A stretch of DNA of 64,000 bases from Octopus bimaculoides (GCF_001194135.2 NC_069001.1:33457559-33521558); one strand, 5' to 3'; shown: positions 6,555 through 55,578, counted from the first letter of the stretch. Program-made: numbers and translations. The notes: generated by a model from the sequence alone, not told the origin.

Positions 6555-6773
6555 ATATTCCCAATGTCGATCTTTATCTTTCCTCATCCGCCATCGTTTA
6601 ACAAGAAGCACGCACGCATTGCAGATATCCCCTGATCTGTTGGCCACGTGAAAGCACCGCCGAAAGTCTCTTTCATAACGCTCACTGCTTGTAAAGCGAG
6701 AGCTAGAAGATTTCACGCGACAGATGCAACAGCCCGTCTGGCTGCGATACATCTTATGCCTGTTGCTGGACAT
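6555..6773 (-). CDS. SINHCAF: SIN3-HDAC complex-associated factor (FAM60A family), coding exon 1 (73 codons)
   Basis: Translates MSSNRHKMYRSQTGCCICRVKSSSSRFTSSERYERDFRRCFHVANRSGDICNACVLLVKRW...HWEY. This matches the recalled FAM60A N-terminus (KMYRSxxGCCICRxKSSSSRFT...RSGDICNACVLLVKRW). Donor TAT|GTAAGT at 6554 (phase 0). Upstream acceptor tttttcag lies at 6802, so 6774-6801 is 5'UTR. The ORF track start at 6782 is a TTG; the true ATG is 6773. Confidence 0.96.
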
Positions 6774-8007
6774 TTTGAACAAGTCAAGTCGATAATGTTT
6801 GCTGAAAAATATAGAAACGTTTTTTTTTTATTATATTAGTTTTCTTTTGAAAATCTTCCTATAAAGAAACAAAGCTCAATCATTGTAATTTAGATAAAAC
6901 AAACAATAGTAAAAGATTGATTAGACATTTTCAATGCTGTTTCACCACTTAACCCCCTCCACACCTCTTCCAGACAATTACTTAAACGATTAGCCACATA
7001 ACTAAGTACACAAATGATTATGGGTAATGTAAATTAAAAATGTAGGTAGGAATGTATATTTTGAAACAGTTGAGCCTTTCTCCCTTAAAAATGTTCTCTT
7101 ACTAGTTTTAAAGTTTGTATGCACATGTTACATATGTAATTTAAAGGAGCAAACAGGTAGACTTGTTAGAGTGTTGGGTAGAACACTTCACAGTATTTGA
7201 CCTGACACTCAGCACTCAGAGTTCAAATAATGCTGAACCCAACTTTGACTTTCATCCTTTCAAGTTTGATAAAAAAAAAATGTATCAAAGCAAGGCAGTG
7301 GATTGATAGATTGCACAGCAGCAGATTAGATACCTTGTGGTGTTTGTTTAGCTCTTTACATTTTGAGTTCAAATGCTGCTGTGGCCCACTTGGTTGGTAG
7401 ACTTAATCAGCTACCTGATTTAACATCATCACCTGGTTGGTATCTTGAGTACCTTTAGCAAAATCCATTCTGTTACTAGCATTCAGACAAGGACTCCAGT
7501 TTAAGGATACATTCTTTCCTTCTTACTGGTCTTAGAAGCTCTGTGAAAGGTCATGAACACCACACTACTTACCCTTCTGACTAAAAGATAAGAACCCAAA
7601 GGCTCTGGGTTCAATCTCACTGTGAAGTACAGAGGGTAAGTTGTGTCATACCACAGCCTTAAGATGACCTAAAGCCTGTCAGATAGATTGTACCTACTTT
7701 GAAGTTGATAGACTTAATCCATCACCTAGTTCAACACCACTGAGTGGTTGCCTTTAGCAGAGTCCACTTTGATGCAAGCATTTGGATCTGTTCTCCAATC
7801 TGAAACAAACTAAAATATCTTAATGTGTTGCTTCATACCATAGCTAACAACTGGTTGTCATTTCTTCTTCCCTTTAACTCTATAATTTTTGGAGTCCCTG
7901 ATAAAGGTCATCAGTATTAAACCCTTCCTCTCTTGACCACATAATATTAAAAGAAAAAAATGTGAGGTGCAGGAGTGGTTTTGTGGTAAGAAGCTTGATT
8001 CCCAACC

Positions 8008-8050
<43 letters not shown>

Positions 8051-8470
8051 GATTTAATATACTGAGTAAAAATTCAAAGGAGAGAGAATACATATGTTTA
8101 AAAATCATTTTGGATACTAATTGAAAAATATCTGTCCTATAAATTATTAACGGCGATTACAATAAGCACATATGCATACACACAAAGCATACATACATAT
8201 ACACACGTGCACACAGATGTTGAAACATTCATTCATACACACAAGCACACACACAAACACGCGCGTGCACATGAATATATATGTACCTATGTATACATGT
8301 ATATTAACAATTTGAGAATTGGAGCAATGGGACAACATACAGTTTCTGCTCAATCCTAAATTCCGTGGAATTAAGTGTATGAGCGGTAGGACATCACTCT
8401 TTTGTGTAGTTGTGTGGTTGCTAGTTCGAGAGCTAGCAATCACAATTTAACTCCACTGAATTTGGGGCCA

Positions 8471-8769: not shown

Positions 8770-9300
8770 CTAACGAGGTGTTGATACAAAATCAAGATAG
8801 GCAATCAAGGAACTTATTCTGTTGCACTTTTTGGAGGGTAAACGGAATTTTTCTTTATTATTATCTTTTTATATATATATTTATATATAAATTCACACGA
8901 CCTTTGCAGGTCCTGCTTCTCAGAGTCGATGTGGCTGATACGGGGGGAGATCTCGGTGAGTCTGAGAAACATAGTGAAAGAAAGGTAATGAAATGGAGAC
9001 TGTTATGGTGAGAGAGAGAGAGGAGGAAACAGAAAGTGAGTGAGAGAGAGAGAGGGAAAAGAGAGAAAGAGGAAACTGTCACTGAGGAAAGAGAGGGGGG
9101 AGGGAGAACACACGTTGTTACTGAGGAGAGATAGGAGAGGAGGATAAACATTGTTACTGAGGAAAGAGAGAGGGAGGGAAAGAGGAGAACTATCAAGTCG
9201 CGAACAAATTGGAAGAAACAGACGACATATCACGTGACACACTGTCGGTGGATCTGAAATGGTGAACCGCGAATTTTTGAAAGAGAAAAGTTTCAAGAAA
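8770..9300. promoter_or_regulatory. Putative SINHCAF promoter / 5' region, possibly bidirectional
   Basis: CpG content rises abruptly here compared with 1-8.7 kb. GA-rich tract, ATTGG at 9208 and TCACGTGA at 9230. A weak minus-strand donor candidate CAAAG|GTCGTG lies near 8901. TSS cannot be determined. Confidence 0.5.
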
Positions 9301-9513
9301 ATATATATAATAATAATTGAACGACTTAAAAAGTGTTATTCACGATTTTCTTATTTATAAATACGATTTATAGAATAAGGTAAGTAACTGGGTTTTGTTT
9401 TTTCTCTATATTTTAAAACTTTGAAATAACATTGTTTTAAACTTGATGACAAGCGATGTGTGCCAATATATTTCGAAGTCAAAACCATTGAGAAACAATG
9501 TTTTATGCGGTAG
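9189..9513 (+). promoter_or_regulatory. Tandem cassette A: motif block, putative non-coding first exon, donor, short intron
   Basis: actatcaagtc (9189), ATTGG (9208), CAGACGAC, TCACGTGA (9230-9237), donor AAG|GTAAGT (GT 9380), AG at 9512-9513. Confidence 0.6.
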
Positions 9514-9739
9514 ATGTTTCACTCCCGCGAGAATTAAAAGAACAGACGAATGATACAGGGTATTCAATCATGACCATTCGGACAGTGCCTATACGACTAG
9601 GCCAGGGGTCCTTAACCGCCGGGCTGCACAGAAAGAGCAGATTTTAAAATTTTATTTCTATTTTATTGACTACCGCAGTCTACAGAGTGTTTTTGCATTA
9701 TATACGTACTATATGTGTAATGTATATGTAATAAGTTGA

Positions 9740-10113
9740 GGCGCAATGGCCCAGTGGTTAGGGCAGCGGACTCGCGGTCATAGGATCGCGGTTTCGATTC
9801 CCAGAGCGGGCGTTGTGAGTGTTTATTGAGCGAAAACACCTAAAGTTCCACGAGTCTCCGGCAGGGGAGGGTTGCGAACCCTGCTGTACTCTTTCACCAC
9901 AACTTTCTCTCACTCTTTCTTCCTGTTTCTGTTGTGCCTGTAATTCAAAGGGTCAGCCTTGTCACACTGTGTCACGCTGAATATCCCCGAGAACTACGTT
10001 AAAGGTACACGTGTCTGTGGAACGCTCAGCCACTTGCACGTTAATTTCACGAGCAGGCTGTTCCGTTGATCGGATCAACTGGAACCCTTAACGTCGTAAG
10101 CGACGGAGTGCCA
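9740..10113 (+). mobile_element. tRNA-derived SINE family 1, near-intact copy
   Basis: Pol III A box TGGCCCAGTGG (9747) and B box GGTTTCGATTCC (9790), followed by the family core and 3' end gacggagtgcca. Confidence 0.9.
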
Positions 10114-10398
10114 ACAAACAACAAACATGTAATAACTAGATTATATATCATGCATTTTATTGTGTTTTCCGGTCTGTGGGAAAATTGTCTTGCACTAAGC
10201 CGGTCCATGAAGCAAAGAAGGTTGGGGGCCACTAGACAAGACGATACTCATGTTTAAAACTCTATTTTCACTTTGTCATTCAGAAACATGTATAACTTGG
10301 CTTCACGACCGGGAGGGGGGAATATTTTACTTTACGATTAATAAGTGCAGTTGTAGAATTCTTCATTCTTTGTATTGTTGAACGGAATTCAATATTCT

Positions 10399-10464
10399 AT
10401 TTACCAGTTATTCAGTGTAAATTTACCATTTATTCAGTGTAAATTTACCATTTATTCAGTGTAA
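10399..10464. repeat. 22 bp tandem repeat x3 (atttaccatttattcagtgtaa)
   Basis: Direct reading; one mismatch in the first unit. Confidence 0.9.
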
Positions 10465-10984
10465 ACTTTTTGGAGGCGTGTATGGTTGCATCACATCGTT
10501 TTGAATTTTATTTTCTTCCGTTTTGAATTGTTGTTAAAGATGGAAAACTAATTTGCGTGATGTTGCCTTTAATACAATTTTTCTTCGAAAGAAGTTTTCA
10601 CTTGACATGGATATTCTGAGGAATATCTGGTTGCTAGTTGTAAAAGGATAAGTCATCATATAGGCAGAGCCAGATTTATGTATGAGCCATGAACCCCTCC
10701 CCCAAGGAGGGCAGGGGAATATATTGGCTCAGGAGCCCCACTAGAGTTATATTCGGCTCAGTATACAGGAGCCATATGTAGTTTGATTGGATAGTCCAAA
10801 CTATTTGCAACAATATGTACCATAAAATGAAACTATAACCCTCAATATCCAGGTGATGGTGTTAACGAAAGAAAGGGATGAATGGATGGATAGATTAAAG
10901 TGTGCGTGCGTATGTGTGTGTGTTTGTGTGGGTGTGTGAGAGAGAGAGTGAGAGAGAGAGAAAGAGAGAGTGAGAGAGTCATGA

Positions 10985-11292
10985 CCAAATTAGAAGCAGA
11001 CGATATGTCACGTGACACTGCGTTATGGCTGGTTCTCAAATAATCCAGCGCAAATTTTTAAAAGAAAAGTTTAAAATTTAAGAAAATCTATAAGATTGAA
11101 CATCTTGAAAACTGTTTTATTCATGATCTTTTTAATACATAAAATGTAATGTGAAAAACAAAGGTAAATAATTTTCAACTTTAGAATGAGTTGGTTTTCT
11201 CTTATTTAATTTTCAAGCGTAGGAAAGTAATATATTTGATTTCTAGTTTGTCACAAATTGAAGCCATTGAGAAGCAATGTGTTTTGTTATAG
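10985..11292 (+). promoter_or_regulatory. Tandem cassette B
   Basis: GCAGACGA, GTCACGTGAC (11007-11016), donor AAG|GTAAAT (GT 11164), AG at 11291-11292. Confidence 0.6.
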
Positions 11293-11531
11293 ATGTTTTG
11301 TTATAGCTGCTGATTAACAAAAGGGATAAAAGACTAAATTCAAAGACCTAACCAAGAATGATTCCCTCCATTTTATTTAGACAAGTAGGGAGTAACTTGA
11401 GGGATCCTACTTGGCTGCTATTTCTAGCTAGATGGACGACAAGATAGGCTTCAAAAGTTTTGTTTTGCGGTCTGAATTCTTTGCAGCAAAAGTCAATCCT
11501 GCTAAAAGCATTCAAGATCCAGGTGGAGGTG

Positions 11532-11570
<39 letters not shown>

Positions 11571-11644
11571 GGAGGCAGAGAAAACGAGAGGAGCTGAAGG
11601 AGAGAGAAAGGAAGATAGAAGAGAGAGGGAAGGTGCGCGTTGAA

Positions 11645-11947
11645 GACTATCAAGTCATGAGCAGACGACACATGTGATATACTGTGTTATGCCAGTGGTC
11701 TTCAAAAAGTGCGCTGCGGATTTTTAAAGAAAAATTACAAACTTCAGATTAAACATCTTGAAAACCGTTTCATTCCTGATTTTGTTATATACAAATATGA
11801 TTATAAAACAAGGTAAGTAATAGCTTTTTAAATTTTTAACTTTAAAATGAAATGTATTTCTTTTTAAACTTTCCCATAGACAAGCAGGGTATTTGAATTC
11901 TAGCTTGTCACGGTCAAAACTATTGAAAAGCAATGTATTTGTAATAG
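11645..11947 (+). promoter_or_regulatory. Tandem cassette C
   Basis: actatcaagtc, GCAGACGAC, variant E-box ACATGTGA (11670), donor AAG|GTAAGT (GT 11813), AG at 11946-11947. Confidence 0.6.
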
Positions 11948-12183
11948 ATGTTTACTCTTGAGAAAAATTTGAATCAGTAGACGATTGATAAAAGGCACCC
12001 TTCTATGGACACCCAATCTTTATTTCAGGCAATGTGTCTAAGATTGTTATCCAATGTACTCTTCCATCTTTTACGACCGATAGGGAGTGATTTGAGAGAA
12101 TTCGATCGCTGTCTCTAGCAGGTCGAGCGATTAGCTTGACCAATTTAGGGTTCAAAATGGTTGTAAGGTTCAACTTCGCTAAA

Positions 12184-12221
<38 letters not shown>

Positions 12222-12222
12222 T

Positions 12223-12560
12223 GAGCGTTCAACGCACTCTTTGAACAAATGGAAAGAGCAGACGACTTATCACGTGATAGACTGCTGAACACTCCGGCAT
12301 TAAATCAACGAGATGAAATGGCGCGCCACGGAATTTAAAACTTTAGAAAATCTAGAGTCGTGTCTAAACGTCACGAATACTGTATTATTCATGATTTTGT
12401 CATCTACAAACGAGTATATGGTATGATACAAGGTAAGCAATAGTTCTCTAGTTTTAGCTTTAAGCAAAATGGGAGAATGATATTTTATTTGATGCTCCAG
12501 CGTTCTTGCATAAGTAAAAAAACAACAAAAAAACAGAACCAATGTGTCATATCATTGTAG
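12223..12560 (+). promoter_or_regulatory. Tandem cassette D
   Basis: GCAGACGAC, TCACGTGA (12270), donor AAG|GTAAGC (GT 12433), AG at 12559-12560. Confidence 0.6.
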
Positions 12561-13379
12561 TTTAGCCCCGAGGGAAATCTGGACGAGTAAACCAATTATA
12601 AAAAAAACGATCCATAAGTTAAATGCTCCAGTTTTAACTACATCGATTAGCAGCTAATATTATTTGGTTTAAACCGTCAGAGAAAGTTTTTTCATTTAAT
12701 ATTTTGTCTTCTTATCAAAAGCCTAACTACAGTTTAGCGCATCCATTTTCTCCACTTTATTTTTACGAAATTCTGCAGAAATGAATTTTTTAAGGTTTAC
12801 ATGACAATTGTCAGTTTTTGATATTTCTTCATCAAGAAAAGACATTCTTATCATTTTAACTATTTTGACAACTTGTTCATAATCTTTGAAGAACGTATGC
12901 CATTATCCTCATCGATATTATTTATTATCAATACGAAATCGGAAGGCATGATAAAATATTCTTTCTAGTTTAAGTTTTGTTTTCGACAATATAAATCGAA
13001 AGTAATCAGAAATTCGAATATTTTCCATTTGTAGGTTATAACCCAATTAAAATGTATTATTGAATTAAATTCACTACCTTATTTACTTCCATTAAACCCG
13101 TTATATTGTTAGCTGTTGGTTGACAAAAGGGAGAGTATTTAACTCAAAGATTACTCTAAATGACTTCCATTTTTTTAAAAGACAAGTAGGAAGTAACTTG
13201 AAGGATATTTGGCTTCTATTTCTTGCAAGGCGAGCGACCACATGGGCTTTAACAGTTTAATTTTGAGGTCCAGCTAAAAGCATTCAAGATGCAGATGGTG
13301 GTGGTGCGTGAATGTATATGAGTGAGAGAGAAAGAGGGAGAGAGAGGGAGGGGGGAGAGGGAGGGAGATGGGAAGAGAG

Positions 13380-13692
13380 AGCGTTCAACACTATCAAGTC
13401 GTGAACAAATTGGAAGCAGACGACACATCACGTGACTGTTATGTCAGTAGTTCTCAAATGGGGAGCTTCAGGCTTTTGAAAGAAAAATTTTAAACTTGAG
13501 AAAATTCGTAATAATGATGGAACGACTTGAAAAAAATGTTATTCACAATTTTCTTATACATAGACATATATAATTTATAAAACGAGATAAGTAAAAATTT
13601 TCTATATTTTTAACTTGAAAATAAATTTCTTTTAACTTTCATGCGATGTGTATCATGAAGTGAAAACCAAGAAGTAACGTGCTATGTCACAG
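13380..13692 (+). promoter_or_regulatory. Tandem cassette E (donor mutated)
   Basis: actatcaagtc, ATTGG, GCAGACGAC, TCACGTGA (13428). The donor position reads GAG|ATAAGT (GT changed to AT at 13587), with an alternative GT at 13591. AG at 13691-13692. Confidence 0.55.
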
Positions 13693-14489
13693 ACGTTTAG
13701 TCCCGGCAGAACTCTGAGGGAGCAGATCATTGATAAAATGCGATCCACCATGACTATTCTATATTTTAAGTAGTGCATTTAAGACTATGTTATTTAATGT
13801 ATCCATCCCTCCCTTTTTTAAAAGACATAAGGAATGATTTAAAGATACTTGGCTGCTGTTTCTAGGAGAACAAATGACTAGAAAGAGGCCTTCAAAGGTT
13901 TGCAATAGAGTCAGCTCTGCTAAAAGCACTCAATACCTAGTCAAAATTTGTGGCTTAGTAGCCAGCTTTTTTTTGGCAAAAATGTTGTATCCAAATGAAC
14001 AGAATGCAATACTTAATAAGTAATTTAGTTTATCGAATCCAGGAAGAAGGAAAGATAGAAAGTAAACTGAATTTGTGTAAAGAACTGAGTCTATTCTTTT
14101 GAGGAAAAGAACTGGACACAGAGGGAAAGAGAAATGGATATGTCGAACAAAATAGGAAGCAATGGATTAAGAGGACAAAAGGGTCAGACAATAGCGTTAA
14201 AGAGAACGGGATAACAATTTCAACGTAAAACGTGCGGACGTCACACGTTTGTTCTCAGAAACTAAAAAAAAAAAAGTTTGAAGTTAATATAAAGAAGGAG
14301 AAAAGAAAAAGACACAAAGAGCGAGAAAAGAATACATGTTGCGATGAGAGGTTGGAAACAAGTACTGTCATGGACTAAGACAGTGAACAAAAAGGGTCAG
14401 CTAAAAAAGAAAAAAAAAAGGCAAACAAAAAACGGCAAGAGACTAACATTAACAAAATGTGTGTATATGTGTGTGTGTGTGATATATAC

Positions 14490-14786
14490 AGGCGTGAAGG
14501 TGTGTGGCTTAGTGGTTAGAGTATTCAGCTAAAGGTCGTAAGTTCAATTCCTGGCGGTGCGTTGTGTCCTTCAACAAGACACTGTACCTTGCTCCAGTTC
14601 ATTGGGTTGGCAAAAATGAGTTGTACCTGTAATTCAAAGGGCCCAGCCTTGTCATATTCTGAGTCACATTGAATCTCCCTGAGAACTATGTTAAGGGTAC
14701 GTGTGTCTGTGGAGTGCTCACGAGCAGTCTGTTCCGTTGATCGGATAAACTAGAACCCCTGCCATTGTAACCGATGGGGTGCCAGT
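14490..14786 (+). mobile_element. tRNA-derived SINE family 1 copy
   Basis: Same head and core as the 9740 copy. Confidence 0.85.
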
Positions 14787-14843
14787 CATGTATATAGACA
14801 CATATATGCACATATATACACATATGCATACATAAAAATCCTT

Positions 14844-15419: not shown

Positions 15420-16020
15420 CTACAAAGCCGTGATCAGCAGAAAGGGACACAGCAAGCTTCTTTACTGCGTCTGCACACCGGAATTTATCCCTCCAGTCTT
15501 TGAACAGGGACTGAGGCTCAATTCAGATAGCTAAAGTGAAGGTGCTGGAGTGTGTAGTCAAACCCAGGCTGGAGAGGCTTGCCGCAGGAAGGCCATATAT
15601 GTGGCAGACGGATCCAGTTCTTTGCCATACCTCTGCAAAGAATCACAAGTGGTTGTCAGAGATTTCCTACGACTTCATCAACTCCAACTTCTGTCCTCCA
15701 AATTCCTCTGAATATAATCCCATGCATGGGGCGCGGTTGAGAAAAACAGCAACATTCTACTTGCAACATAAAAGCCAAGATGTAGCCAAGAAGAGGTGTT
15801 CGAAGATCTTCCCAAGAACACAATGAGAAACGTATGCACCAGGTTCTGGAACTGTCTTGAAGCCGTGGTGGCAGCTGAGAGTGGCTACTTTGAGTAAATT
15901 GTTATCTCCCAGCCATAAATTAGTTGATATATTTTGACTTAAAATGTTTTCCTTATTATTGGATGAGATATTGTTTTCTTATCTTTTTATGCAAACTGTC
16001 AAATTTAGCCTGAACACTAT
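15420..16020 (+). mobile_element. Tc1/mariner (maT/DD37D-like) 3' remnant
   Basis: FEQGLRLNS..VKVLECVVKPRLERLAAGRPYMWQ...CHTS...WLSE...PPNS..NPM. TIR-like 3' end aaactgtcaaatttagcctgaacacta. Confidence 0.8.
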
Positions 16021-20228: not shown

Positions 20229-20639
20229 AAAAATATTATAATATACACACACGACGAACTTCTTTCAGATTCCGTCTACCAAATCTACACACAAGCCTTT
20301 GGTCGGTCCAAAGCTATAGTAAAAGACACCTGCCCAAGGTACCGCGCAGTGGTGTACACAATTGCAGTTCACCTAGATGCTGGACCATCAGAACCTAAAA
20401 CAATTGCAGCGTGGAAGGCACATATCCGTTTAGAACACACAAAGACTCTTAGGTTGAGCATTTATTTTGGTGTCAGAATTTTCGTTGCACTAATTGCAAC
20501 TTGGTCACTGAAAAGATTCCATTGCATCTCAAATCACTGGCTAGACAAGAACATCTCTGAAATCAGAACCCAGATTTTGAGAAAATTAAAACCCGCCCAT
20601 TATAGCTGACGCATTATATTAATTAATGTACATTTCTTT

Positions 20640-21210
20640 TTTTAAGAAGGAGACAATTGTAAGTTGGAGATTTGACTGCTATTTCTAGCAGGTCGAGCGA
20701 TCACGTACGGGCTCACTCATGAACTCGCGTATGAGGATGCTGTTTAGCTCAGATTAGTCCTGAATAAGCAAACCTACATGATTAAAGATATTTCAACTAT
20801 GTCCACTCCATCTTCATTGCAATGTATGTATGACTTAGCCAATATGTCACGTCTTTAAGACGGCAGGAAGAGATTTGATTGCTATTTCTAGCAAATCGGG
20901 CGATGGATGCTCAGGCTCGCATATGATAATGTAATGGAGATACAGAAGCTTGTACAACTTGTGCCTAATGAGCCCATGATTCATTAGGAAATGAATAATC
21001 CCTGCTGGGAGTGTCTGTGTAATAATACTGACGTTATTATTTAGTCTAACTCTAATCAAGAACTCTAAGACGCAAACCATGACGCCTATCTTCTGACTAT
21101 TTATTACCTCAGACAATATACTTGTCATTAACATATTTTTAAGACAGACAGATGTAATTAGAGAAAGATTTAGATGATATTTCTAGCAGATTGAGCGACC
21201 ACTTAGAGAT
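20640..21210 (+). repeat. Three successive copies of an abundant dispersed repeat (core ttttaagac...gatttggctgctatttctagcaggtcgagcgacc)
   Basis: Core seen at about 20640, 20851 and 21135. The same family recurs more than 20 times across the window on both strands. Confidence 0.8.
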
Positions 21211-27230: not shown

Positions 27231-27817
27231 TAACTACTATTTCCAAGATATATGACGTGTAAGAGAATGATGGTATGGTCAACTAAAACGTGGGTAAATC
27301 CTAATAAGTCTATTCTGTTAACGCTAGTCTTGCTATTAAACAACAGAATACATTATGTATAAGGGGTGGTCAAACTGCAGGGCTCGAACCAACGACCAGC
27401 GAGAAATAGCAGCTAAATCATTCTCAAATCAACCCTGACCATCTTAGAAAACAGAAGTATTGGATAATGTAACCCGGAGTACACAGTTTACGGCTGAGAT
27501 CTCGTTACTCAGGTCTGCGCAACCAGTACTAATTTGAGGGCTTTCAAGCATTTTATTTGCGGTTTATATTGGCTGAGTATCTCTTGCTTTTCATAATAAT
27601 TAATATAAAAGAGTAAATAAGAAAACCAAGCTTCAATTTTTTTACCGTAGACTTCTGCATTAGTACAAAAATATGAGGATTTCAATAAGGTGATACTTTG
27701 CGACTCTCAAAGAAGGCCCCTCGATCTCCTATAAATAACAGCTAAATTTTCAGATCATGCCTAACTGTTGTAAAAGGGGAAGGACACATTTGATAATGTA
27801 GTCCAAGGCACTATGAA

Positions 27818-27848
<31 letters not shown>

Positions 27849-28532
27849 GGAATGGCTACAGATGGAACCCCTTTGATCAGGTTTACTTAACACCCGAAAT
27901 TTATTTGTGCGTACCTTGTTATTTAACCTCAAGGCCAAACCTGATTGAACAGAATTGTAATCAAAGGTGTTCCAGTTATGATCATGTCTTTTGGGGTATA
28001 CCTCGGATTACATTGTCTAATGTCTTCTTTTTTAAGGCAGTTAAGGTATCGTGTGAGGGATATTTCCAACAGGTCAAGCGACCGTATACAGGTTGCTTCG
28101 AGTGGGCTCCTTTTCTGTTTTTTTTTTTAAAGCAAGTCAGGTCATCCTCGCTACACACAATGAAATATCGTGAAATCTTAAATTCAGACAGCATTCAGTC
28201 AGAAACTGATGCACACAATATGAACGAATATACACGTTCATACAAGGAAAAGTGAAAAACAACATTTCCAAACTTCTATTCTTTCATAGAAATACGTGAT
28301 ATTGTGTATGTTTATATACGTACCAGCGCCCGAATTATTCTGGAATAAATAAATGAAATATAAATTAGCCTCTTGGTATTACAATGAGAAAACCAAACTG
28401 GTTGTATTATATGTCTGTCTGGTAGATAAACGTCTGCCTGGTAGCCTGCATGTGATACGAGTGCGTTACTAGCCTACTTGGAATAATACACAAGTATGTC
28501 TGAAATTATGAAATTGAATATATATATATACT

Positions 28533-29152: not shown

Positions 29153-29377
29153 CTTTAGAAATAAACAGAATTTGTTCGCTAGAAAATGTGCGCACAAGCG
29201 AATCTAAAAGACAGTCTTCGGTGACGCAACATGCTAAAAGTAATAATAACAGTAATTATTAATGTACATCTAGTGGTTGTATGATATATACGGCTTAACA
29301 GTTTAATGCTATGTTCGTCTAGTTATTATTATGTAAGTCTACTATAGCGATTACTCAATATGTTGTATAGTTTAATA

Positions 29378-29910
29378 TCAGGTCAGTCTTGATTGAGCAG
29401 ACCTACGACCAAAGGCGTTCCAGCCGTTACCATCATGTCTTTTTATGGATATCTGGAAGTACATTACACAATGTGTACAATATGATCTCAGAAAGTTTTC
29501 GTTGCTATTTCTAGCAAGTCTATGCGACGATATAATGGCTCCCTCATTGACTCGTTATCTAATGTTGTCTAGCTTCAAGTCATTCCTGATCAAGACGCAT
29601 TTTAGCTGTGATCATCCTGTTGTCTTCAAGTAATGCAGTGTATCGAAGACTACATTATCAAATGTGCCTTTGCCTTCTTTAAGACAACAGCGTAAAATTT
29701 GGGAGCGAGTTGACTGCTATTTTTGCAGGTCGTGCGACAACAAAGATTCTTTCGTTACTTAATGTACTTAGTTGTTGTTTAACCCCGGGTCGGTCTTGAT
29801 CATGCAGATCTATATCAAAGGCTTTCCAACCATGCACCTCTTGTGTTTGGCCTGACAAACATCTGTAACTACATTTCTCAGTGTATTTCCTTCTTTAAGA
29901 TGGTAGACTC
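29378..29910 (+). repeat. Head-to-tail trimer (about 190 bp period) of the abundant dispersed repeat
   Basis: Units start at about 29378, 29566 and 29771 with the gtcag.cctgatc.agcagacct.tgatcaaagg..ttcca head. Confidence 0.75.
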
Positions 29911-31734: not shown

Positions 31735-34700
31735 CAGTGGAAACAAAGACAGATAGACAGACAGACAGAAGGAGGTGGGAGGGCGAACGTGAGAAAACTG
31801 CCTGCTCGCATGTGCGACCTACATTCCTATGTTTAAAGGAAGACTTCCACTTCCGCGTTACCCGCTTGCTTGACTCGATACGGCAAATGCAGTCACAGTG
31901 TGACGGCGGCAGCGCCTGAGACAATGGCGTGCCGTTAGCCGACCGGCATGACTCCCTCACCGTCTTGCACCCCTTCTCAACATGTGAACATGAACAGTTA
32001 AAATGCAAGCTGCCTACTCTATAACACTGCTACTACTACCGTTACTCTCTATAACTGCCGGCAACAACCACCGCCAATAACATGTGGTTGGTCTACCGTC
32101 TAGAACTAGCAGCCAAGTCTCCCTAAAATCACACCTTAGGTATGTTAAAGATGCAGAAACATATAGGATAATGTAGTCGGGGTGGGGGTTAAAAAAACGG
32201 GGCACTGGCTGAAAAGCATCTGATTACGTCTAGCTACAAGATAAACAACTTCCTCTCAAATCACACGTTACTGTCTAGAAAAATATCGTTCACAATGAGA
32301 ACTCTCTTAATCTGAAAAATTAAGGGCTGACCAGAGGTTAAACAACAATATATTCATTCGCTATATAACGCCACTACAATCATCATGACTACCACCTTCA
32401 CCAGAAATACATGATCGTCATACATGCTAGAAATAGCAACCAAATCATACACTACTGTCTTTAAAAAAGAACATGGCGGAGTTTTGGAATATGTCCCTCG
32501 AAGTCCCTTACCTGACGGGAAAAGAAAATAGTAGTATTTAATCTTTATGCGCGCGCGCGCACACACACACAATATTCCTATTTCATGTAACAAATTATAA
32601 TTCTGAATTAAAAAATTTTTTTCCCCCAAATACGAATTTGTTACACTTTTGTTTTCACCCACTTCTGTACGAAACATAATCGGGATGATCACAGTTGGAA
32701 CGCCTTTGATCACAGATGATCTTGGGCTATACTATGTACTATTTTGAATATTATCAACATAACCAACAGCACATAACCATAACAACACCTTCATCGAGTC
32801 AAAAGTATAGCCTATACGCGATCGCTCGACCTAACAGAAATAGCAGTCAAATCTACTTAAATCATACCCTACTGCACTAATAAATGAAGATACACTGGAC
32901 AATACGGTCCTAGATAAACGAAATGACAGGCCAGTCACAGCTGGATCTAAACAATAACCACTACTATCACCATCTGATGGTGTCGCTGTCAACATGCTTT
33001 TTAATGATCTTTTTAACAATACCCGGAAAAGCTCAAAATCCGAGTTAACGATAAAATCTCTCTATGTTGTCACTAGACTTGCAGCAAATAAATATCTAAA
33101 TTACAATCCTACCATTATAAAAAGAGGGTCTATTGACAATCATGTAGTCCCAGAGACACTCACTGCTACAAAAAGAAAAAAGAAAGGTACACTCACAACT
33201 ATATATATATATATATATNNNNNNNNNNNNNNNNNNNNNNNNNNNNNNNNNNNNNNNNNNNNNNNNNNNNNNNNNNNNNNNNNNNNNNNNNNNNNNNNNN
33301 NNNNNNNNNNNNNNNNNNNNNNNNNNNNNNNNNNNNNNNNNNNNNNNNNNNNNNNNNNNNNNNNNNNNNNNNNNNNNNNNNNNNNNNNNNNNNNNNNNNN
33401 NNNNNNNNNNNNNNNNNNNNNNNNNNNNNNNNNNNNNNNNNNNNNNNNNNNNNNNNNNNNNNNNNNNNNNNNNNNNNNNNNNNNNNNNNNNNNNNNNNNN
33501 NNNNNNNNNNNNNNNNNNNNNNNNNNNNNNNNNNNNNNNNATATATATATATATATATATATATAATATACAGAGAGAGAGAGAGAGAGATGGCCATGGT
33601 CAGAATGTCCTTTGATCAAAGGCCTGCTCGATCCGAGCTGAGCAGCTGTTAAATAACAATTACAACAAAAGTAGTACATTAACAATTAAGTCCTTAACTT
33701 CGCCGTCACCTCCACCACCAGCATCATTATCGAGCAACCTCCGAGACAACTGTCAGCAAAGCTCGATCACCACTATCACAGCCATCGACACGAGACAACA
33801 AAAGTAGTCAAAGAGTATCAACCACTACCATCGACAGTACAATGGCTATTACTAACTATTATTATACCAAGAACATCATTAGAAATAATACTCGTGTGTC
33901 TTAGGTAATCACTCAATGACATCCGTGTTCGTTTTGATGGAAATCAATAGAGGAAAGAACTGTGTTAAGAGAGCATGATGACAACATTAACAACGACGGC
34001 GATGGTGATGGTCTCTATTAAACATCAACAACAATCATGGAGATATAGAAAATGGTTAAATGTGATAATTTCAACAAGCATTAAGCAAACCTACTGCTGC
34101 TGATGATGACAACAATGAAGATGATGACAACCATCATCACCACCACCACCACCACCACCAAGAACGAAGTCAATGATCGACCCCTTACATGGTCGCTCGA
34201 ATTGTTAGAAATAGCAGCAAAATTATCCTTCAATCACACCTTGTTATCTTTAAAAATATGGAAGAATACGCATGCAATCCTAGAAAATCCCCAATGAATA
34301 AGGGTGGTCATGACTGGAACGCTTTTGATCATAAGTCTACTCTATCAGGATTAAAGTGGAGCTAAAAACAAGCTTCGAACGCCGAACACGGCACAATAGT
34401 AGTTAGGAAGTTCTTGGCAGTCAGTGGGAGAAAGACTGCAATAACAGAGAGGGAGCGGGAGAGAGAAAAAGAAAGAGAGATGGGAGGTTAGAGAAAGGCT
34501 ACCTGTTTGCACTATTTCAGGTAAAAAAAAATAAATTACCCAATTGGTTTTACTGAGTCCCGTCACTCACTACATTGCTCCATTCTTTTTAATTTAAATA
34601 AATAATAAATCAGACATAATAACACAAAAATGTTTTTCCTCTAGTTTTTAAATACTACCCATAGAAATATGCACTGCGAGTCGAAAATAATTTTTAATTG

Positions 34701-44699: not shown

Positions 44700-45660
44700 C
44701 AAAGGGGTACCCAAAAGAAACCAGAATTTTGCAATACTATTTTATTCACTTAGTTTTACATGTTTACCTCTTTATCGCCTTCAAACTTTTCTCCATTTGA
44801 AGCAAGGCATTGATCCAGATGCATTTTCCATTGTTCAAAGCAGTCCTCGAACTCTTGCAAAGTGATGCTTATTAACGCCTTCATCGTTTTTTTCTTCACC
44901 TCTTCCATATCTGCAAAACGTTTTCCTTTAAGAACTATTTTCATTTGGAGGAACAACAAAAAGTTGCAGGGAGCTAGATTGGGTGAAAAGAGAGGCTGGG
45001 TAAACAGGGTTATGCCATTTTTAGTCAAAAACTGTCTCACATTCAAGGTGGTGTGTGAAGGTGCATTGTCATGATGAAACCACCACTCTCCACTTTTGCC
45101 ACTGGTAAGGGCATTTTTGTCTCACCATGTCTTGCAAATGTTTCAGAACTGCCCAGTAAAATATTTGGTTAACAGTTTGACCAGGAGGAACAAATGCTGT
45201 GTGGACAATTCCTTTTGCATTGATGAAACAAATCAGCATTGTCTTGACATTGGACCTCACTTAGCACACATTTTGGGGGCACAGTCACATTGAATACTTC
45301 TGTTGACTTGATAGTTGCTTTGTTTCCAGGTCGTAGCCATAGCTTTCATCACCAGTGATGGCCTTTGAAAAAGGTCCGGATCAACTTCCAACAGTTCTTT
45401 CAGTTCATAACACACATTCAATTGTGACTGCTTTTGATCTTCCATGAGCAAGTGAGGCACAAATTTTGCTGCAACTCTTTTCATTCACAATTCCTCACTC
45501 AAAATTCATTGGGAGGAGCTCCATGACACACCAGTCATATCAACAAGTTTGTCAATCATTCAGCAACAGTCCTCCATGATCAATTCAGGAATTTTTGTGA
45601 TGTTTTCATTTGTTTGGGAGGTCGACAAATTTCAAGCAAGAAAATATTGTTGCCTCGACA
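44700..45660 (-). mobile_element. Decayed mariner
   Basis: MKRVAAKFVPHLL..., RSNVKTMLICF...GIVH..FVPPGQTVNQ.FY..VL, FSPNLAPCNFLLF..MK..LKGKRF. TA plus TIR-like end at 44698. Confidence 0.92.
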
Positions 45661-46264: not shown

Positions 46265-46687
46265 TATCAATGAGTCTGCAAGGAGCTTATCATCAAACTC
46301 AACTGGACGTCCTGTTCAATCTTCATCTTCAAGGCTGAAATCTCCACTTCTGAATTTTGCAAACCATCTTCTGCAAGTTCTTTCATTCAAGCATTCTTTC
46401 CCATAAACTGAGTGTATGTTTCGAGTTGCTTCAGCTGCAGAGTTTCCTTTTTTGTACTCATAAAGCATTACATGCCTCAAATGCTCTTTGGATACTTCCA
46501 TGTTAGGAAGGGTTTTAATCAAAGAAATTTTAATTCTATTATTCTGTAAAATAATATTTAATTAGTTTAAATGTACACAAATGCATAAAAATAATTTTTA
46601 ATTCCATTAATCATTCTAAAATACCATTAAATTTCATTCAATTTTAAAAAAGGTAAAATTGGACAGAACTTATGGGATGGCCTGATA
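46265..46687 (-). mobile_element. Mariner 5' fragment (TIR plus N-terminal HTH)
   Basis: MEVSKEHLRHVMLYEYKKGNSAAEATRNIHSVYG...RTCRRWFAKFRSGDFSLEDE. TIR-like tatcaggccatcccataagttctgtcc on the minus strand. Confidence 0.9.
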
Positions 46688-51686: not shown

Positions 51687-52301
51687 TAATACCACTGTCT
51701 GGCTATGGATGCTTTTAGTGGAGTATATTATGTTGCAGGTAGTTGGACCAGGTCTCTGATTGGAAGATAATTTCCTTCTTTCCACAAGTCTCACACACCC
51801 TGAAAAGGGGCATGGGTACGACCTTTCCTCCCATTGCTAAATCATGTGTAAAAATAGAAAACTAAAAACATACAAAAAGCAGCAAAATAATACAGCAATA
51901 CCAACTATATGGTGTTCCTTGATACAGTCAACCATTTTTAAATTCCAATTATTTGTAGTAATGCTGAAGCACAAGTTATGGGAATTGACTTTTGGGAACT
52001 AAGTATATTATAATCCAAGATTTGTGCTTGACGATCCTTGAGAGATCAAAAGGTCAATTTGCTCATCAGAGATGTGCGAAATGACTTTGTGAGAACCTTT
52101 TCATCTATTATTTTAGCCTTAAATATGCATATTCCCAAGAATATTGTAATATACATGCTCATACTCAAATTCTTAAAAACATCTATGGACCTCATTCATT
52201 ATATGAACCTAATATATATAACATCTGCCAGAACTTTACTTACATTACATATAAGCAACCTGTTGTGCATGTTCACAGCAGGGTTTACATCAGAGCTGTG
52301 A

Positions 52302-52632
52302 AGGCTTGTGGTTTAGTGGTTTGGGGTATCCAGCTCATGATCAAAAGATCATAAGTTCAATACCCAGTGACATGCTGTGTCCTTGAGCAAGACACTTTAT
52401 TTAATGCTGCTTCAGTCCACTCAGCTGGCAAAAATGAATTGTACTGGTAATTCAAAGAATTCAAAGGGCTAGTCTTAACATACTGTGTCACAGTGGAATC
52501 TCACTGACAACTACATTAAGGGTATGCATATCTGTGAAGTGCTCAGTGACTTGTACGTAAATTTTACGAGTAGGCTGTTGAGTTGATTGGATCAGCTGGA
52601 ACACTCGTCATCGTAACCAACAGAATGCCAGT
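52302..52632 (+). mobile_element. tRNA-derived SINE family 1 copy, CpG-decayed
   Basis: Aligns with the 9740 copy. Confidence 0.85.
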
Positions 52633-52945
52633 ACATCAGATGTCCCTGTCCTACAAAAATGCTTTTACAAGAGCTAGGGATTCCTCAATCCCAGTGGTTT
52701 ATATTTACAATCTAATTAATTCCTAGCTGGGACCTTGGCAGATGTGACTACTCTGGGTTGAGGTGGTTCCTTACTCCTCAGAACCCCATAGCTCCTGAAC
52801 AAGGGGCCCACTGCCAAATGCAGTTTAAACACAGATAGACAGATATACGTATACATACATACAAACATACATAGATACATACATATAAGTGTGTGTGTGT
52901 GTGTGTGTGTGTATGCGCTGCACACTCATGCTTTGCACTAGGTGG

Positions 52946-54330: not shown

Positions 54331-55578
54331 CAAAGGTGGGTTGAAAAGTTCGTAGGCTGATTATGAAGGAGTGGCGATTGAACTGTGAATTCTCGCATGC
54401 GTTAATTTCAACCCATCTTATTAATAACTGCATTGTTTCTTTCCAGGTAAACTGACATCTGACTGTTCAAAGAAGACTTCAAAAGGTAACTAGTAGCAAC
54501 TTCTTTTGAAAATGAGCAAAATTTGGCATCGTGGTGTTATCAAGTACCTGCAGAAAAAGGGTTTAGCCCCTAAAACGACATTCATGCTGACATAGTTGCT
54601 ATATTAGGGGATGACACTCCAGCTTTATCAACAGTGCAAAAATGGCAAGCTGAATTTAGGAAGGGAAGGAAGAGTCTTGAAGATAATCCAAAGTCTGGAC
54701 GTCCTGGAACTGCCACCACCGAGGAAAACATTGATCGTGCTCACCACATATGGATTACAGACGTTTGAATATAAATCAAATAGCCAATCCTCTTAGCATA
54801 TCCCGTGAGAGGGTTGAATATATTCTGCACAATGAACTTGGCATGATAAAAGTTTCCTACTCGGTGGGTGCTACGTCCATTGACACCTAATCAAAAGTGC
54901 ACCAGGCTGATTACATCACGGGAAAATCTAACATTGTTTGAGGCAAATCCAGCTAGTCTTATTGAATGGTTTTTCATCCAGGATGAATATTGAATTCATC
55001 ACATTGACCCAGAGACAAAAAGACAGTCCATGCGGTGGAAACACCCCTACTCACCTGCTTCAAGAAAGCCAAGGCCGTTTCATCTGCAGGGAAGGTGATG
55101 GCCTCAGTTTTTCGAGATGCGAAATGCATTGTGTTTATTTACTATCTTCAAAAGTGTCACACCATCAATGGGGAATACTATGCTAATTTGCTGAGGCAGT
55201 TACGAAAGGCTATCAAGACTAAATGCTTCATGAGGACAATGCTCTAGCACACGTTCTTCGTTTCAATGGCTGATGTGCGTGACTATGCCTTTGAACTGGC
55301 TGATCAGCCCTTCATTTCTCTAGATTTGGCTCTATCTGACAATCATGTTTCCTATCATGAAAAAACACTTGGCTGGGAACCTGTATCGCAGTGATGATGA
55401 CGTCATATCTACTGTTGACTTTTTTGAGCAAACGGATGTAAGTTTCTTCACTCATGGAATCCAAACACTGCAACACCGATGGAAGAAGTGTGTGGGCTGC
55501 AAGGGGGATTGTGATCTCGTTTGGTCACTTTCCGTCAGAGTATGTTAATCAGCCTATGAAGTATTCAGCCGACCCTCG
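54331..55578 (+). mobile_element. Full-length decayed mariner with TIRs
   Basis: TA|caaaggtgggttgaaaagttcgtaggctga ... tcagcctatgaagtattcagccgaccctcg. Remnant ...SAGKVMASVFRDAKCIVFIYYLQKCHTINGEYYANLLRQLRKAIK... Confidence 0.92.

What the first reader, a model, noticed from the sequence alone, without database searches (positions are those of the whole stretch)
9005..13940. Array of five diverged promoter/first-exon cassettes head-to-head with SINHCAF
Seen: five homologous plus-strand units with E-boxes at 9230, 11008, 11670, 12270 and 13428. Each unit is a GA-rich tract, then (actatcaagtc)-caaat(t)gga-GCAGACGAC-TCACGTGA, then 143-163 nt, then AAG|GTAAG(T) (GT at 9380, 11164, 11813, 12433; mutated to AT at 13587), then 102-135 nt, then an AG abutting a copy of the dispersed repeat. 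The linker gctaaaagc recurs at 11501, 12178, 13273 and 13919, the last being the stump of a sixth unit. Bulk sequence is visibly diverged with many indels, yet the CpG-containing motif block and the donor are kept in 4-5 of 5 units. Established: TCACGTGA is a USF/MITF-TFEB (CLEAR-type) E-box, ATTGG is an NF-Y box, and clustered variable promoter-plus-first-exon arrays spliced to common exons exist (vertebrate protocadherins, UGT1). Inference: this is a tandemly amplified set of alternative promoters/first exons for a plus-strand gene or lncRNA, or a multiplied enhancer bank for SINHCAF. It is the best candidate for an undescribed system in this window.
Basis: partly seen in the sequence, partly recalled or inferred. 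Interest (0 to 1): 0.82.

Follow-up and report, generated by a model that had tools for sequence, protein, structure and literature searches.

The report
Old tandem array of E-box modules
Just upstream of the SINHCAF gene lies an old five-fold tandem duplication of a ~640-bp segment that has decayed almost everywhere except a short E-box motif, so it looks like a multiplied gene-control element and not the proposed set of alternative first exons.

Summary
The five plus-strand units are real (9005-13945; 60-73% pairwise identity), and they are homologous along their whole length. Each unit has four parts: a (TG)n(GA)n tract, a ~330-nt core found nowhere else in the window, one copy of a 196-nt dispersed element (DR, 31 further copies in the window), and a linker. 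The DR copies inside the units share derived characters. One DR insertion was therefore duplicated together with the core, and the array is about as old as the DR family.

Against that near-neutral decay, GCAGACGAC-N3-TCACGTGA is clearly conserved (0.85-0.90 identity against 0.58-0.63; P<1e-4). All four TCACGTGA sites in the 64 kb lie in the array. A second block, GTTATTCAYGATTTTCTTA, is also conserved.

The splice-donor claim fails. Donor conservation is not above background (P=0.34), and such 9-mers occur at chance frequency. The "acceptor" is only the DR boundary. No plus-strand host exon is recognisable in the next 47 kb. ATTGG is intact in 2 of 5 units, and unit 3's E-box reads CATGTG.

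Best reading: a selectively maintained bank of E-box regulatory modules beside the SINHCAF 5' end. Transcription and genome-wide copy number could not be tested.

The parts
9005..13945 (+). Whole array: five head-to-tail diverged units plus a 43-nt stump of a sixth
9005..10842 (+). Unit 1. GA-rich tract 9005-9185, including three ~38-nt sub-repeats; motif block 9189-9238; block 2 at 9334-9352; donor-like site 9377-9385; DR positions 6-100 at 9516-9598; the rest is disrupted (see insertion) and degenerate up to 10842
9599..10245 (+). Unclassified insertion splitting the DR copy of unit 1; it carries a tRNA-derived SINE copy at about 9735-10125
   Evidence: terminal inverted repeats not confirmed
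10843..11500 (+). Unit 2. (TG)n(GA)n 10897-10981; motif block 10977-11016 with a perfect GTCACGTGAC; ATTGG mutated to ATTAG; block 2 at 11115-11133; weakened donor AAG|GTAAAT 11161-11169; DR 11296-11450
11501..12177 (+). Unit 3. Linker GCTAAAAGC 11501-11509; (TG)n(GA)n 11532-11625; GCAGACGAC 11661-11669 followed by CATGTG 11671-11676 (E-box changed, CCAAT part deleted); perfect AAG|GTAAGT 11810-11818; DR 11950-12139
12178..13272 (+). Unit 4. Linker 12178-12186; (GA)16 12187-12218; motif block 12235-12279; block 2 at 12383-12401; AAG|GTAAGC 12430-12438; DR start 12558-12579; a unique 520-nt insertion 12580-13099 inside the DR; DR remainder 13110-13248
13273..13918 (+). Unit 5. Linker 13273-13281; GA-rich tract 13320-13381; motif block 13390-13436 with ATTGG and TCACGTGA; block 2 at 13537-13555; dead donor GAG|ATAAGT 13584-13592; DR 13695-13889
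13919..13945 (+). Stump of a sixth unit (linker GCTAAAAGC plus about 20 nt); the array ends here
9230..9237 (.). TCACGTGA palindrome of unit 1. The others are at 11008-11015, 12270-12277 and 13428-13435. Each is preceded by (G/A)CAGACGA(C/T)-N3
6555..6801 (-). First coding exon of SINHCAF/FAM60A: acceptor tttttcag at 6810-6802, ATG 6773-6771, donor GT 6554-6553
   Evidence: (PF15396); the same acceptor-before-ATG layout is seen in L001 and L002
8901..8960 (-). Candidate non-coding first exon of SINHCAF (CpG-containing, ends AAAG|GTCGTG). This is inference only. On the plus strand the same stretch reads as an exon-like segment 8907-8955 (ttgcag|G...TCG|GTGAGT)
   Evidence: no transcript data

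Best explanation
The array is an old, degenerate tandem duplication: five units and a stump of a ~640-bp composite segment lying directly upstream of SINHCAF, head-to-head with it. The ancestral segment had four parts: a (TG)n(GA)n microsatellite, a ~330-nt single-copy core, one inserted copy of a 196-nt dispersed element (DR), and a short linker.

The segment was amplified as a whole. Unequal recombination between flanking microsatellite or DR copies is the most likely route; this step is inferred. Since then the units have drifted apart at about the rate of unrelated DR copies, and they have collected insertions in units 1 and 4.

Two short blocks escaped the decay: GCAGACGAC-N3-TCACGTGA(C) and, about 105 nt downstream, GTTATTCAYGATTTTCTTA. 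I read this as purifying selection on transcription-factor binding sites. TCACGTGA, with T and A flanking the CACGTG core, is the form preferred by USF and MITF/TFE-class bHLH-zipper factors (established knowledge). The array would then act as a homotypic bank of four intact E-box modules, that is, a multiplied upstream regulatory element. Its most plausible target is SINHCAF, whose likely non-coding first exon abuts unit 1.

Shown: the anatomy, the single origin of the DR copies, the age relative to DR, and block-specific conservation. Inferred: factor binding, the target gene, and the mode of amplification.
For: Structure. Units are homologous over their whole length, with pairwise identity 0.55-0.73 in the non-DR part and 0.45-0.72 in DR plus linker. 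The core HMM hits only the five units in the 64 kb. The DR HMM hits 36 places, 31 of them outside the array.

Origin and age. The DR copies in the units share at least 12 derived characters against the dispersed copies. Their mutual identity (0.60) equals that among dispersed copies (0.60).

Constraint. Mean pairwise identity is 0.85 for GCAGACGAC..E-box, against 0.63 for the 'exon', 0.63 for the 'intron' and 0.58 for DR. On the untouched MAFFT alignment without unit 3, the best 20-nt window is this block (0.90; none of 10000 column shuffles reaches it), and block 2 scores 0.81 (P=0.0008). Without any alignment, CAGACGA is the only 7-mer shared by all five units, and TCACGTGA and GCAGACGA are among the seven 8-mers shared by at least four units (null 0.04). 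G/C majority columns are kept 65/70 in the block against 396/510 elsewhere (P=0.0024); majority CpGs are kept 9/9 against 17/32 (P=0.015). Under DR-calibrated neutral decay, the joint expectation of CAGACGA in 5/5 and TCACGTGA in at least 4/5 units is at most 0.0002 per unit scanned. All four TCACGTGA sites of the window lie in the array.

Position. SINHCAF has an acceptor just 5' of its ATG, so it needs an upstream non-coding exon. The CpG-containing candidate at 8901-8960 lies 45 nt from the first GA tract.
Against: There are no expression, chromatin or binding data. No orthologous locus could be obtained, so the conservation is only among paralogous units in one genome. Short-tract gene conversion confined to the block is unlikely, but I could not exclude it. 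Two other animals' SINHCAF loci have no TCACGTGA in the 10 kb upstream of the first coding exon, so the E-box is not an evident ancestral SINHCAF feature. The SINHCAF start site is inferred, and its candidate donor (GTCGTG) is weak. The region is not a CpG island; CpG observed/expected is 0.4-1.3. Invertebrate intergenic DNA may be unmethylated anyway, so CpG retention on its own is weak evidence. Unit 3 has lost the CACGTG core, so not every unit is maintained. Genome-wide copy number of the core is unknown.
Confidence: 0.45

Rival explanations
1. Neutral relic. The array is an old segmental tandem duplication with no present function. The conserved blocks reflect local mutation-rate differences, alignment effects or occasional gene conversion.
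For: Bulk divergence equals that of unrelated DR copies. Units 1 and 4 tolerate large insertions. Unit 3 lost the E-box, unit 5 lost the donor, and three units lost ATTGG. DR forms loose clusters elsewhere in the window (29370-29906, 32085-33171), so tandem amplification around DR is commonplace here. There is no CpG island.
Against: Block-specific conservation is strong, survives an alignment-free test and holds on an untouched alignment. The block is GC- and CpG-rich, while G/C sites elsewhere in the units decay faster than A/T sites (0.78 against 0.85 kept), so mutation bias predicts the opposite. The joint neutral expectation is at most 0.0002.
Confidence: 0.25
2. Each unit is an alternative promoter plus non-coding first exon, ending at AAG|GTAAGT and spliced to shared downstream exons of a plus-strand gene or lncRNA.
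For: A conserved promoter-like block lies 142-163 nt upstream of a consensus-quality donor in four units, two of them perfect 9-mers. All units share one orientation, divergent from SINHCAF. Block 2 and an A/T-rich TATA-like stretch lie between the E-box and the donor.
Against: Donor conservation is not above background (P=0.34). Donor-like 9-mers occur at chance density, 19 against 19.3, so a given 640-bp unit has roughly a 0.1-0.2 chance of containing one. The 'exon' evolves at the neutral rate. The supposed acceptor is the DR boundary. No plus-strand host exon is recognisable among ORFs of at least 55 aa from 13.9 to 61 kb. The units contain no ORF. Only units 1 and 4, and weakly unit 2, keep both the E-box and a donor.
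Confidence: 0.15
3. The whole unit, or its core, belongs to a transposon or satellite family that is rare enough to be absent from the rest of this 64 kb. The conserved blocks would then be the element's own promoter or recognition sequences, not locus-specific regulation.
For: A third of each unit is a high-copy element. Units are bounded by microsatellites, as retroposon tails often are. DR itself forms tandem clusters. Tandem-repeat-containing mobile elements are known in molluscs (own knowledge).
Against: The core has no other copy in the window, while DR has 31. Many dispersed DR copies start at the same profile position (5-8) and end near 195, so DR is a discrete element and the core is not its 5' extension. 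The DR copies in the units share derived characters, which points to one insertion followed by duplication in place and not to repeated insertions.
Confidence: 0.12

Closest known systems
Homotypic clusters of transcription-factor binding sites and tandemly repeated enhancers or upstream elements (for example the Xenopus rDNA spacer with repeated enhancer elements and duplicated spacer promoters, or the viral 72-bp enhancer repeats); own knowledge
   Same: The same short binding motif is repeated several times within a few kb next to a promoter through tandem duplication of a DNA segment. The motif is kept while the surrounding sequence drifts.
   Different: The units here are long (~640 bp), old (about 60% identical) and mostly transposon or microsatellite filler. 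Activity and target are untested.
Clustered variable first-exon arrays (vertebrate protocadherin alpha/gamma, UGT1A); own knowledge
   Same: A tandem array of paralogous units in one orientation, each with a conserved upstream motif and, in four of five, a 5' splice-site-like sequence.
   Different: Variable exons in those arrays are long and protein-coding, and they splice to identified constant exons. Here there is no ORF, no constant exon in 47 kb, no excess conservation of the donor, and a neutral 'exon' body.
CLEAR-type and USF-type E-box promoters (GTCACGTGAC, TCACGTGA bound by TFEB/TFE3/MITF and USF); own knowledge
   Same: The TCACGTGA core with a T/A flank is present in four units, and unit 2 has the full 10-bp GTCACGTGAC palindrome.
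   Different: CLEAR elements are defined functionally, near start sites of lysosomal and autophagy genes. Here the start site, the bound factor and the target are unknown. The invariant partner GCAGACGAC is not part of any motif I can name.
Macrosatellites and large tandem repeats (for example D4Z4)
   Same: Head-to-tail repeats of a unit hundreds of bp long, with regulatory sequence inside each unit.
   Different: Macrosatellite units are usually homogenised (over 90% identical) and numerous. These five units are about 60-70% identical and show no sign of recent homogenisation.
Mobile-element/satellite hybrids of molluscs (tandem-repeat-containing non-autonomous elements); own knowledge
   Same: The DR element is both dispersed and found in short tandem clusters, often next to microsatellites.
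   Different: That describes DR, not the single-copy core that carries the conserved blocks.

Membership tests
Variable first-exon array (Pcdh/UGT1A type) | Tandem paralogous units, each with its own upstream promoter motif | tested here: inconclusive
   The units and the conserved motif are present. Promoter activity cannot be tested from sequence.
Variable first-exon array (Pcdh/UGT1A type) | Each variable exon ends in a functional 5' splice site maintained by selection | tested here: not met
   Donor-like sequence is present in 4 of 5 units, but its conservation is not above background (P=0.34) and its occurrence is at chance density.
Variable first-exon array (Pcdh/UGT1A type) | Shared downstream constant exons with a common acceptor | tested here: not met
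   No plus-strand host exon was recognised from 13.9 to 61 kb. Short or non-coding exons, and exons beyond the window, would be missed.
Variable first-exon array (Pcdh/UGT1A type) | Variable exons encode protein | tested here: not met
   There is no conserved ORF in the units; the only ORFs are low-complexity readings of the microsatellites.
Dispersed transposon | Many copies at unrelated sites | tested here: inconclusive
   The DR third of the unit has 31 copies outside the array. The core has none in the 64 kb. A genome-wide test was not possible: the collections hold no DNA of this organism.
Tandem segmental duplication / macrosatellite | Head-to-tail units homologous over their whole length | tested here: met
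Tandem segmental duplication / macrosatellite | High inter-unit identity from ongoing homogenisation; copy-number polymorphism | tested here: not met
   Identity is 0.45-0.73. Polymorphism cannot be tested here.
Homotypic TF-site cluster / repeated upstream regulatory element | Several copies of one binding motif within a few kb, enriched over the surroundings | tested here: met
   Four TCACGTGA sites lie within 4.2 kb and none in the other 59 kb. They are related by descent, so they are not independent events.
Homotypic TF-site cluster / repeated upstream regulatory element | Motif under purifying selection relative to its flanks | tested here: met
   (among paralogous units only)
Homotypic TF-site cluster / repeated upstream regulatory element | Factor occupancy and effect on a target gene | not testable with these tools
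   This needs ChIP, CUT&RUN or DAP-seq, ATAC-seq, and reporter or deletion assays.
CLEAR / USF E-box element | GTCACGTGAC-like palindrome | tested here: met
   Unit 2 has the perfect 10-mer. Units 1, 4 and 5 have TCACGTGA with 8-9 of 10 matches. Unit 3 has lost it.
CLEAR / USF E-box element | Location close to a transcription start site of a regulated gene | not testable with these tools
   No start-site data exist. The SINHCAF first exon is inferred only.
NF-Y (CCAAT) box | Intact CCAAT/ATTGG pentamer | tested here: not met
   It is intact only in units 1 and 5.
Structured RNA gene cluster (miRNA, snRNA and the like) | Conserved secondary structure or an Rfam match | tested here: not met
   RNAalifold gives -3.5 kcal/mol over 325 columns. 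There is no Rfam match at E<=1 and ARAGORN finds no tRNA.

The most novel reading that the evidence does not exclude
The units are working alternative promoter and non-coding first-exon cassettes (at least units 1, 2 and 4) of an unannotated spliced plus-strand transcript divergent from SINHCAF. That would make this a protocadherin/UGT1-style variable 5' array built from non-coding exons, maintained in a cephalopod-like genome for as long as the DR repeat family has existed.
Probability: 0.13. Interest if true: 0.65.

Novelty: new member of a known kind. Interest (0 to 1): 0.35.

Why it matters
If the E-box block is bound and active, this would be a clean natural example of a regulatory module multiplied by tandem duplication and then kept by selection while everything around it decayed. 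It sits next to a gene for a SIN3-HDAC co-repressor subunit. It would give a compact test bed of one to five units for how motif copy number tunes a promoter in a mollusc, an animal group with very little functional cis-regulatory annotation. If it is inactive, it is an ordinary relic of repeat-driven duplication. The main lesson would then be that a good splice-donor match in AT-rich DNA is not evidence of an exon.

Tried and rejected
(1) Orthologous and transcript evidence. The protein search with the SINHCAF exon found no relative above 63% identity over the full query and no cephalopod. Exact look-ups of the window's exon ORF found nothing (one search failed because I had truncated the ORF).

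(2) Collection scans. The core motif was absent from metagenome contigs and viral contigs. A positive control using the window's own high-copy SINE was also absent, so these nulls say nothing about copy number in the source genome.

(3) Ancestral SINHCAF E-box. Two other animals' loci (L001 bivalve, L002) have no TCACGTGA in the 10 kb upstream. This gives no support.

(4) Structured RNA or small-RNA gene cluster. Rejected.

(5) A sixth, degenerate unit right of the stump, which I suspected by eye at about 14040-14260. Rejected: the local alignment score of 30 is below the shuffle mean of 34, and the unit HMM finds only the stump.

(6) Homology between the stretch left of unit 1 (8840-9005, the candidate SINHCAF exon 1) and the inter-unit junctions, also suspected by eye. 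The alignment does not support it.

(7) A MITE with terminal inverted repeats as the insertion in unit 1. Not confirmed.

(8) A plus-strand protein-coding gene downstream. Only a mariner fragment was found. The tool refuses translations containing stop codons, so only ORFs of at least 55 aa were scanned.

(9) My first hand-edited alignment was mis-registered. It was discarded and rebuilt, then cross-checked on the untouched alignment.

(10) The literature search found nothing comparable in cephalopods.

Full report
SETTING. The window is AT-rich eukaryotic DNA (GC about 0.37) with many microsatellites, N gaps and transposon debris. On the minus strand, 6555-6801 encodes the N-terminus of SINHCAF/FAM60A (MYRSQTGCCICRVKSSSSRF...; Pfam PF15396 relatives). 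The best relatives over the full query are only 60-63% identical (a bivalve and unnamed contigs). The exon is preceded by a clean acceptor (tttttcag|c at 6802/6801), 28 nt before the ATG. The gene must therefore have a non-coding first exon further upstream, and two other animals' SINHCAF loci share that layout. The only CpG-containing candidate is 8901-8960 (minus), ending AAAG|GTCGTG. This is inference: its donor is weak, and on the plus strand the same stretch reads as an exon-like segment. Intron 1 (7000-8000) has no CpG at all. The array has CpG observed/expected of 0.4-1.3, against 0.59 for the whole window.

THE OBSERVATION. The five units exist, at the stated coordinates. The composite GCAGACGAY-N3-TCACGTGA occurs four times (9218, 10996, 12258, 13416) against 0.08 expected. 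All four TCACGTGA sites of the window lie in the array. GCTAAAAGC occurs at 11501, 12178, 13273 and 13919. Three corrections apply. Unit 3 reads GCAGACGAC-ACATGTGA (CATGTG, not CACGTG) and has lost the caaattgga segment. ATTGG is intact only in units 1 and 5.

ANATOMY. Profile searches split the unit into two kinds of sequence. A ~330-nt core (pre-block, motif block, 'exon', donor-like site and most of the 'intron') is found only in the five units. The tail is a discrete ~196-nt dispersed element, which I call DR. DR has 36 hits at E<=1e-3 in the 64 kb, on both strands, 31 of them outside the array. Many copies start at profile position 5-8 and end near 195. DR forms loose clusters of its own (29370-29906, three head-to-tail copies; 32085-33171; 20613-21208). 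A unit therefore reads: (TG)n(GA)n, core, DR, a linker of about 50 nt containing GCTAAAAGC, then the next microsatellite. Unit 1's DR is split after position 100 by a ~650-bp insertion carrying a tRNA-derived SINE. Unit 4's DR is split by a unique 520-nt block. The array starts at the GA tract at 9005; the flank to its left is not homologous to the junctions. It ends with a 43-nt stump at 13945, with no sixth unit.

HISTORY. The DR copies in the units share at least 12 derived characters against the dispersed copies. At several positions, for example, all four unit copies carry A or T where most dispersed copies carry C, A, G or T. One DR insertion was therefore duplicated along with the core, in place. 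The unit DRs are as different from each other (0.60 identity) as unrelated DR copies are (0.60), so the amplification is about as old as the DR family. An identity of 0.60 corresponds to a Jukes-Cantor distance of about 0.57 substitutions per site between two units (my arithmetic). Unequal recombination between flanking microsatellites or DR copies is the obvious way to make such an array. That step is inferred.

WHAT IS CONSERVED. Taking DR as an internal neutral yardstick, mean pairwise identities are as follows:
- DR: 0.58
- 'exon': 0.63
- 'intron': 0.63
- linker: 0.70
- GTTATTCAYGATTTTCTTA (block 2): 0.78
- donor 9-mer: 0.82
- GCAGACGAC..TCACGTGAC: 0.85

I had hand-aligned unit 3 in the motif block. 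I therefore repeated the test on the untouched MAFFT alignment without unit 3. The best 20-nt window is the E-box block (0.90; none of 10000 column shuffles reaches it). Block 2 is second (0.81, P=0.0008). An A/T-rich stretch in the 'intron' is marginal (P=0.065). The donor window is ordinary (0.69, P=0.34). Without any alignment, CAGACGA is the only 7-mer present in all five units. The 8-mers present in at least four units are the GCAGACGAC words, TCACGTGA, the linker words and one DR word, against a null of 0.04. Elsewhere in the units G/C sites decay faster than A/T sites (0.78 against 0.85 kept), yet in the block G/C sites are kept 65/70 (P=0.0024). Majority CpGs are kept 9/9 in the block against 17/32 elsewhere (P=0.015). 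Under DR-calibrated neutral decay, the joint expectation of the observed retention is at most 0.0002.

The claim about the donor does not. Donor-like 9-mers with at most 1 mismatch occur 19 times in the window against 19.3 expected. From that density, a given 640-bp unit has roughly a 0.1-0.2 chance of containing one, and the ancestral site's survival in four units needs no selection.

WHAT IT IS NOT. It is not a structured-RNA gene cluster: the RNAalifold energy is negligible, Rfam gives nothing at E<=1, and ARAGORN finds no tRNA. It does not encode protein. Within this window the core is not a dispersed transposon, although a third of each unit is. No recognisable plus-strand host exon lies downstream: ORFs of at least 55 aa from 13.9 to 61 kb give only a mariner Transposase_1 fragment. 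Short or non-coding exons would escape that scan.

MECHANISM. The pattern is neutral decay everywhere except two short blocks about 105 nt apart. One block is a palindromic TCACGTGA with the T/A flanks preferred by USF and MITF/TFE-class bHLH-zipper proteins (established knowledge). That is the signature of maintained transcription-factor binding sites. I therefore read the array as a multiplied upstream regulatory element: four intact E-box modules spread over 4.2 kb, the nearest about 270 bp from the probable 5' end of SINHCAF. Whether the modules act as enhancers, as weak divergent promoters, or only unit 1 matters, cannot be told from sequence. The cassette reading needs promoter and donor together. 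Only units 1 and 4, and weakly unit 2 (GTAAAT), have both. Unit 3 lost the CACGTG and unit 5 lost the GT, which is the pattern expected if the combination is not under selection.

LIMITS. All evidence for constraint comes from paralogues in one genome. I could not obtain the source genome, related genomes or any transcript data. The metagenome and viral scans for the core were empty. The positive-control scan of the metagenome collection with the window's own SINE was empty too, so the nulls are uninformative. Two distant SINHCAF loci show no upstream TCACGTGA, so the module is not an obvious ancestral feature of the gene. The partner motif GCAGACGAC, the best-kept sequence of all, and block 2 match nothing I can name.

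VERDICT. The feature is real and modestly interesting: an old tandem array in which selection has apparently preserved an E-box module in four of five units. It is a new example of a known kind of thing (tandemly multiplied cis-regulatory sites). It is not an undescribed system, and the alternative-first-exon interpretation is not supported by any test available here.

Noticed in passing
window 29370-29906 (+), 32085-33171 (-), 20613-21208 (+), 27393-28088: The 196-nt DR element (consensus begins TGTTTTTTAGTCTCAGGTCAGTTCTGATTGAGCAGAC and ends ...CTATTTCTAGCAGGTCGAGCGACTACATAGAGG) forms its own loose tandem clusters with periods of about 200-400 bp. With 36 hits in 64 kb it is one of the commonest sequences in the window. 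It behaves like a hybrid between a mobile element and a satellite.
   Followed up: partly
window 9599-10245, with the SINE at about 9735-10125: A ~650-bp insertion splits unit 1's DR copy and carries a tRNA-derived SINE, although ARAGORN does not call a tRNA there. Other copies of this SINE lie at about 2370-2700, 14430-14800 and 52270-52650. By eye the flanks look like inverted ends, but the repeat finder did not confirm them.
   Followed up: partly
window 7000-8000: SINHCAF intron 1 contains no CpG at all over 1 kb, whereas the upstream array has a CpG observed/expected ratio of 0.4-1.3. This is consistent with germline gene-body methylation stopping near the 5' end of the gene.
   Followed up: no
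window 8907-8955: A CpG-containing 49-nt segment reads as a well-formed internal exon on the plus strand (ttgcag|G...TCG|GTGAGT). On the minus strand it is a possible SINHCAF first exon with a weak donor (AAAG|GTCGTG). Which strand, if either, is transcribed is unknown.
   Followed up: partly
window 11501, 12178, 13273, 13919 (+) and 58377 (-): The linker word GCTAAAAGC is kept as well as the E-box (4 of 4 junctions that have it, plus the stump; 0.31 expected in the window), and I have no explanation for it. Weak linker-like matches on the minus strand lie inside two SINE-like copies in SINHCAF intron 1 (7441-7483, 7745-7786).
   Followed up: partly
window 9334-9352, 11115-11133, 11768-11786, 12383-12401, 13537-13555: A second conserved block, GTTATTCAYGATTTTCTTA (P=0.0008), lies about 105 nt downstream of each E-box and 25-45 nt upstream of the donor-like site. 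It is followed by a TATA-like A/T stretch (TATAAATA in unit 1). If this is a core promoter, the 'donor' would sit at the start site and not at an exon end.
   Followed up: partly
window 10399-10465: A 22-bp minisatellite (ATTTACCATTTATTCAGTGTAA, 3 copies, 97% matches) lies inside the degenerate remainder of unit 1.
   Followed up: no
window 8204-8209: One further CACGTG (without the T/A flanks) lies in the TG-rich stretch between SINHCAF intron 1 and the candidate first exon.
   Followed up: no
window 44759-45121 (-), 46319-46561 (-), 15515-15823 (+), 54932-55244 (+), about 57400-57980 (+), 62107-63222 (-): There are several decayed mariner/Tc1-type transposase fragments; Pfam confirmed one plus-strand fragment as Transposase_1. 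A LINE-type endonuclease-like ORF at 62107-63222 is interrupted by an N gap. The 50 kb to the right of the array looks like repeat-filled intergenic or intronic DNA.
   Followed up: partly
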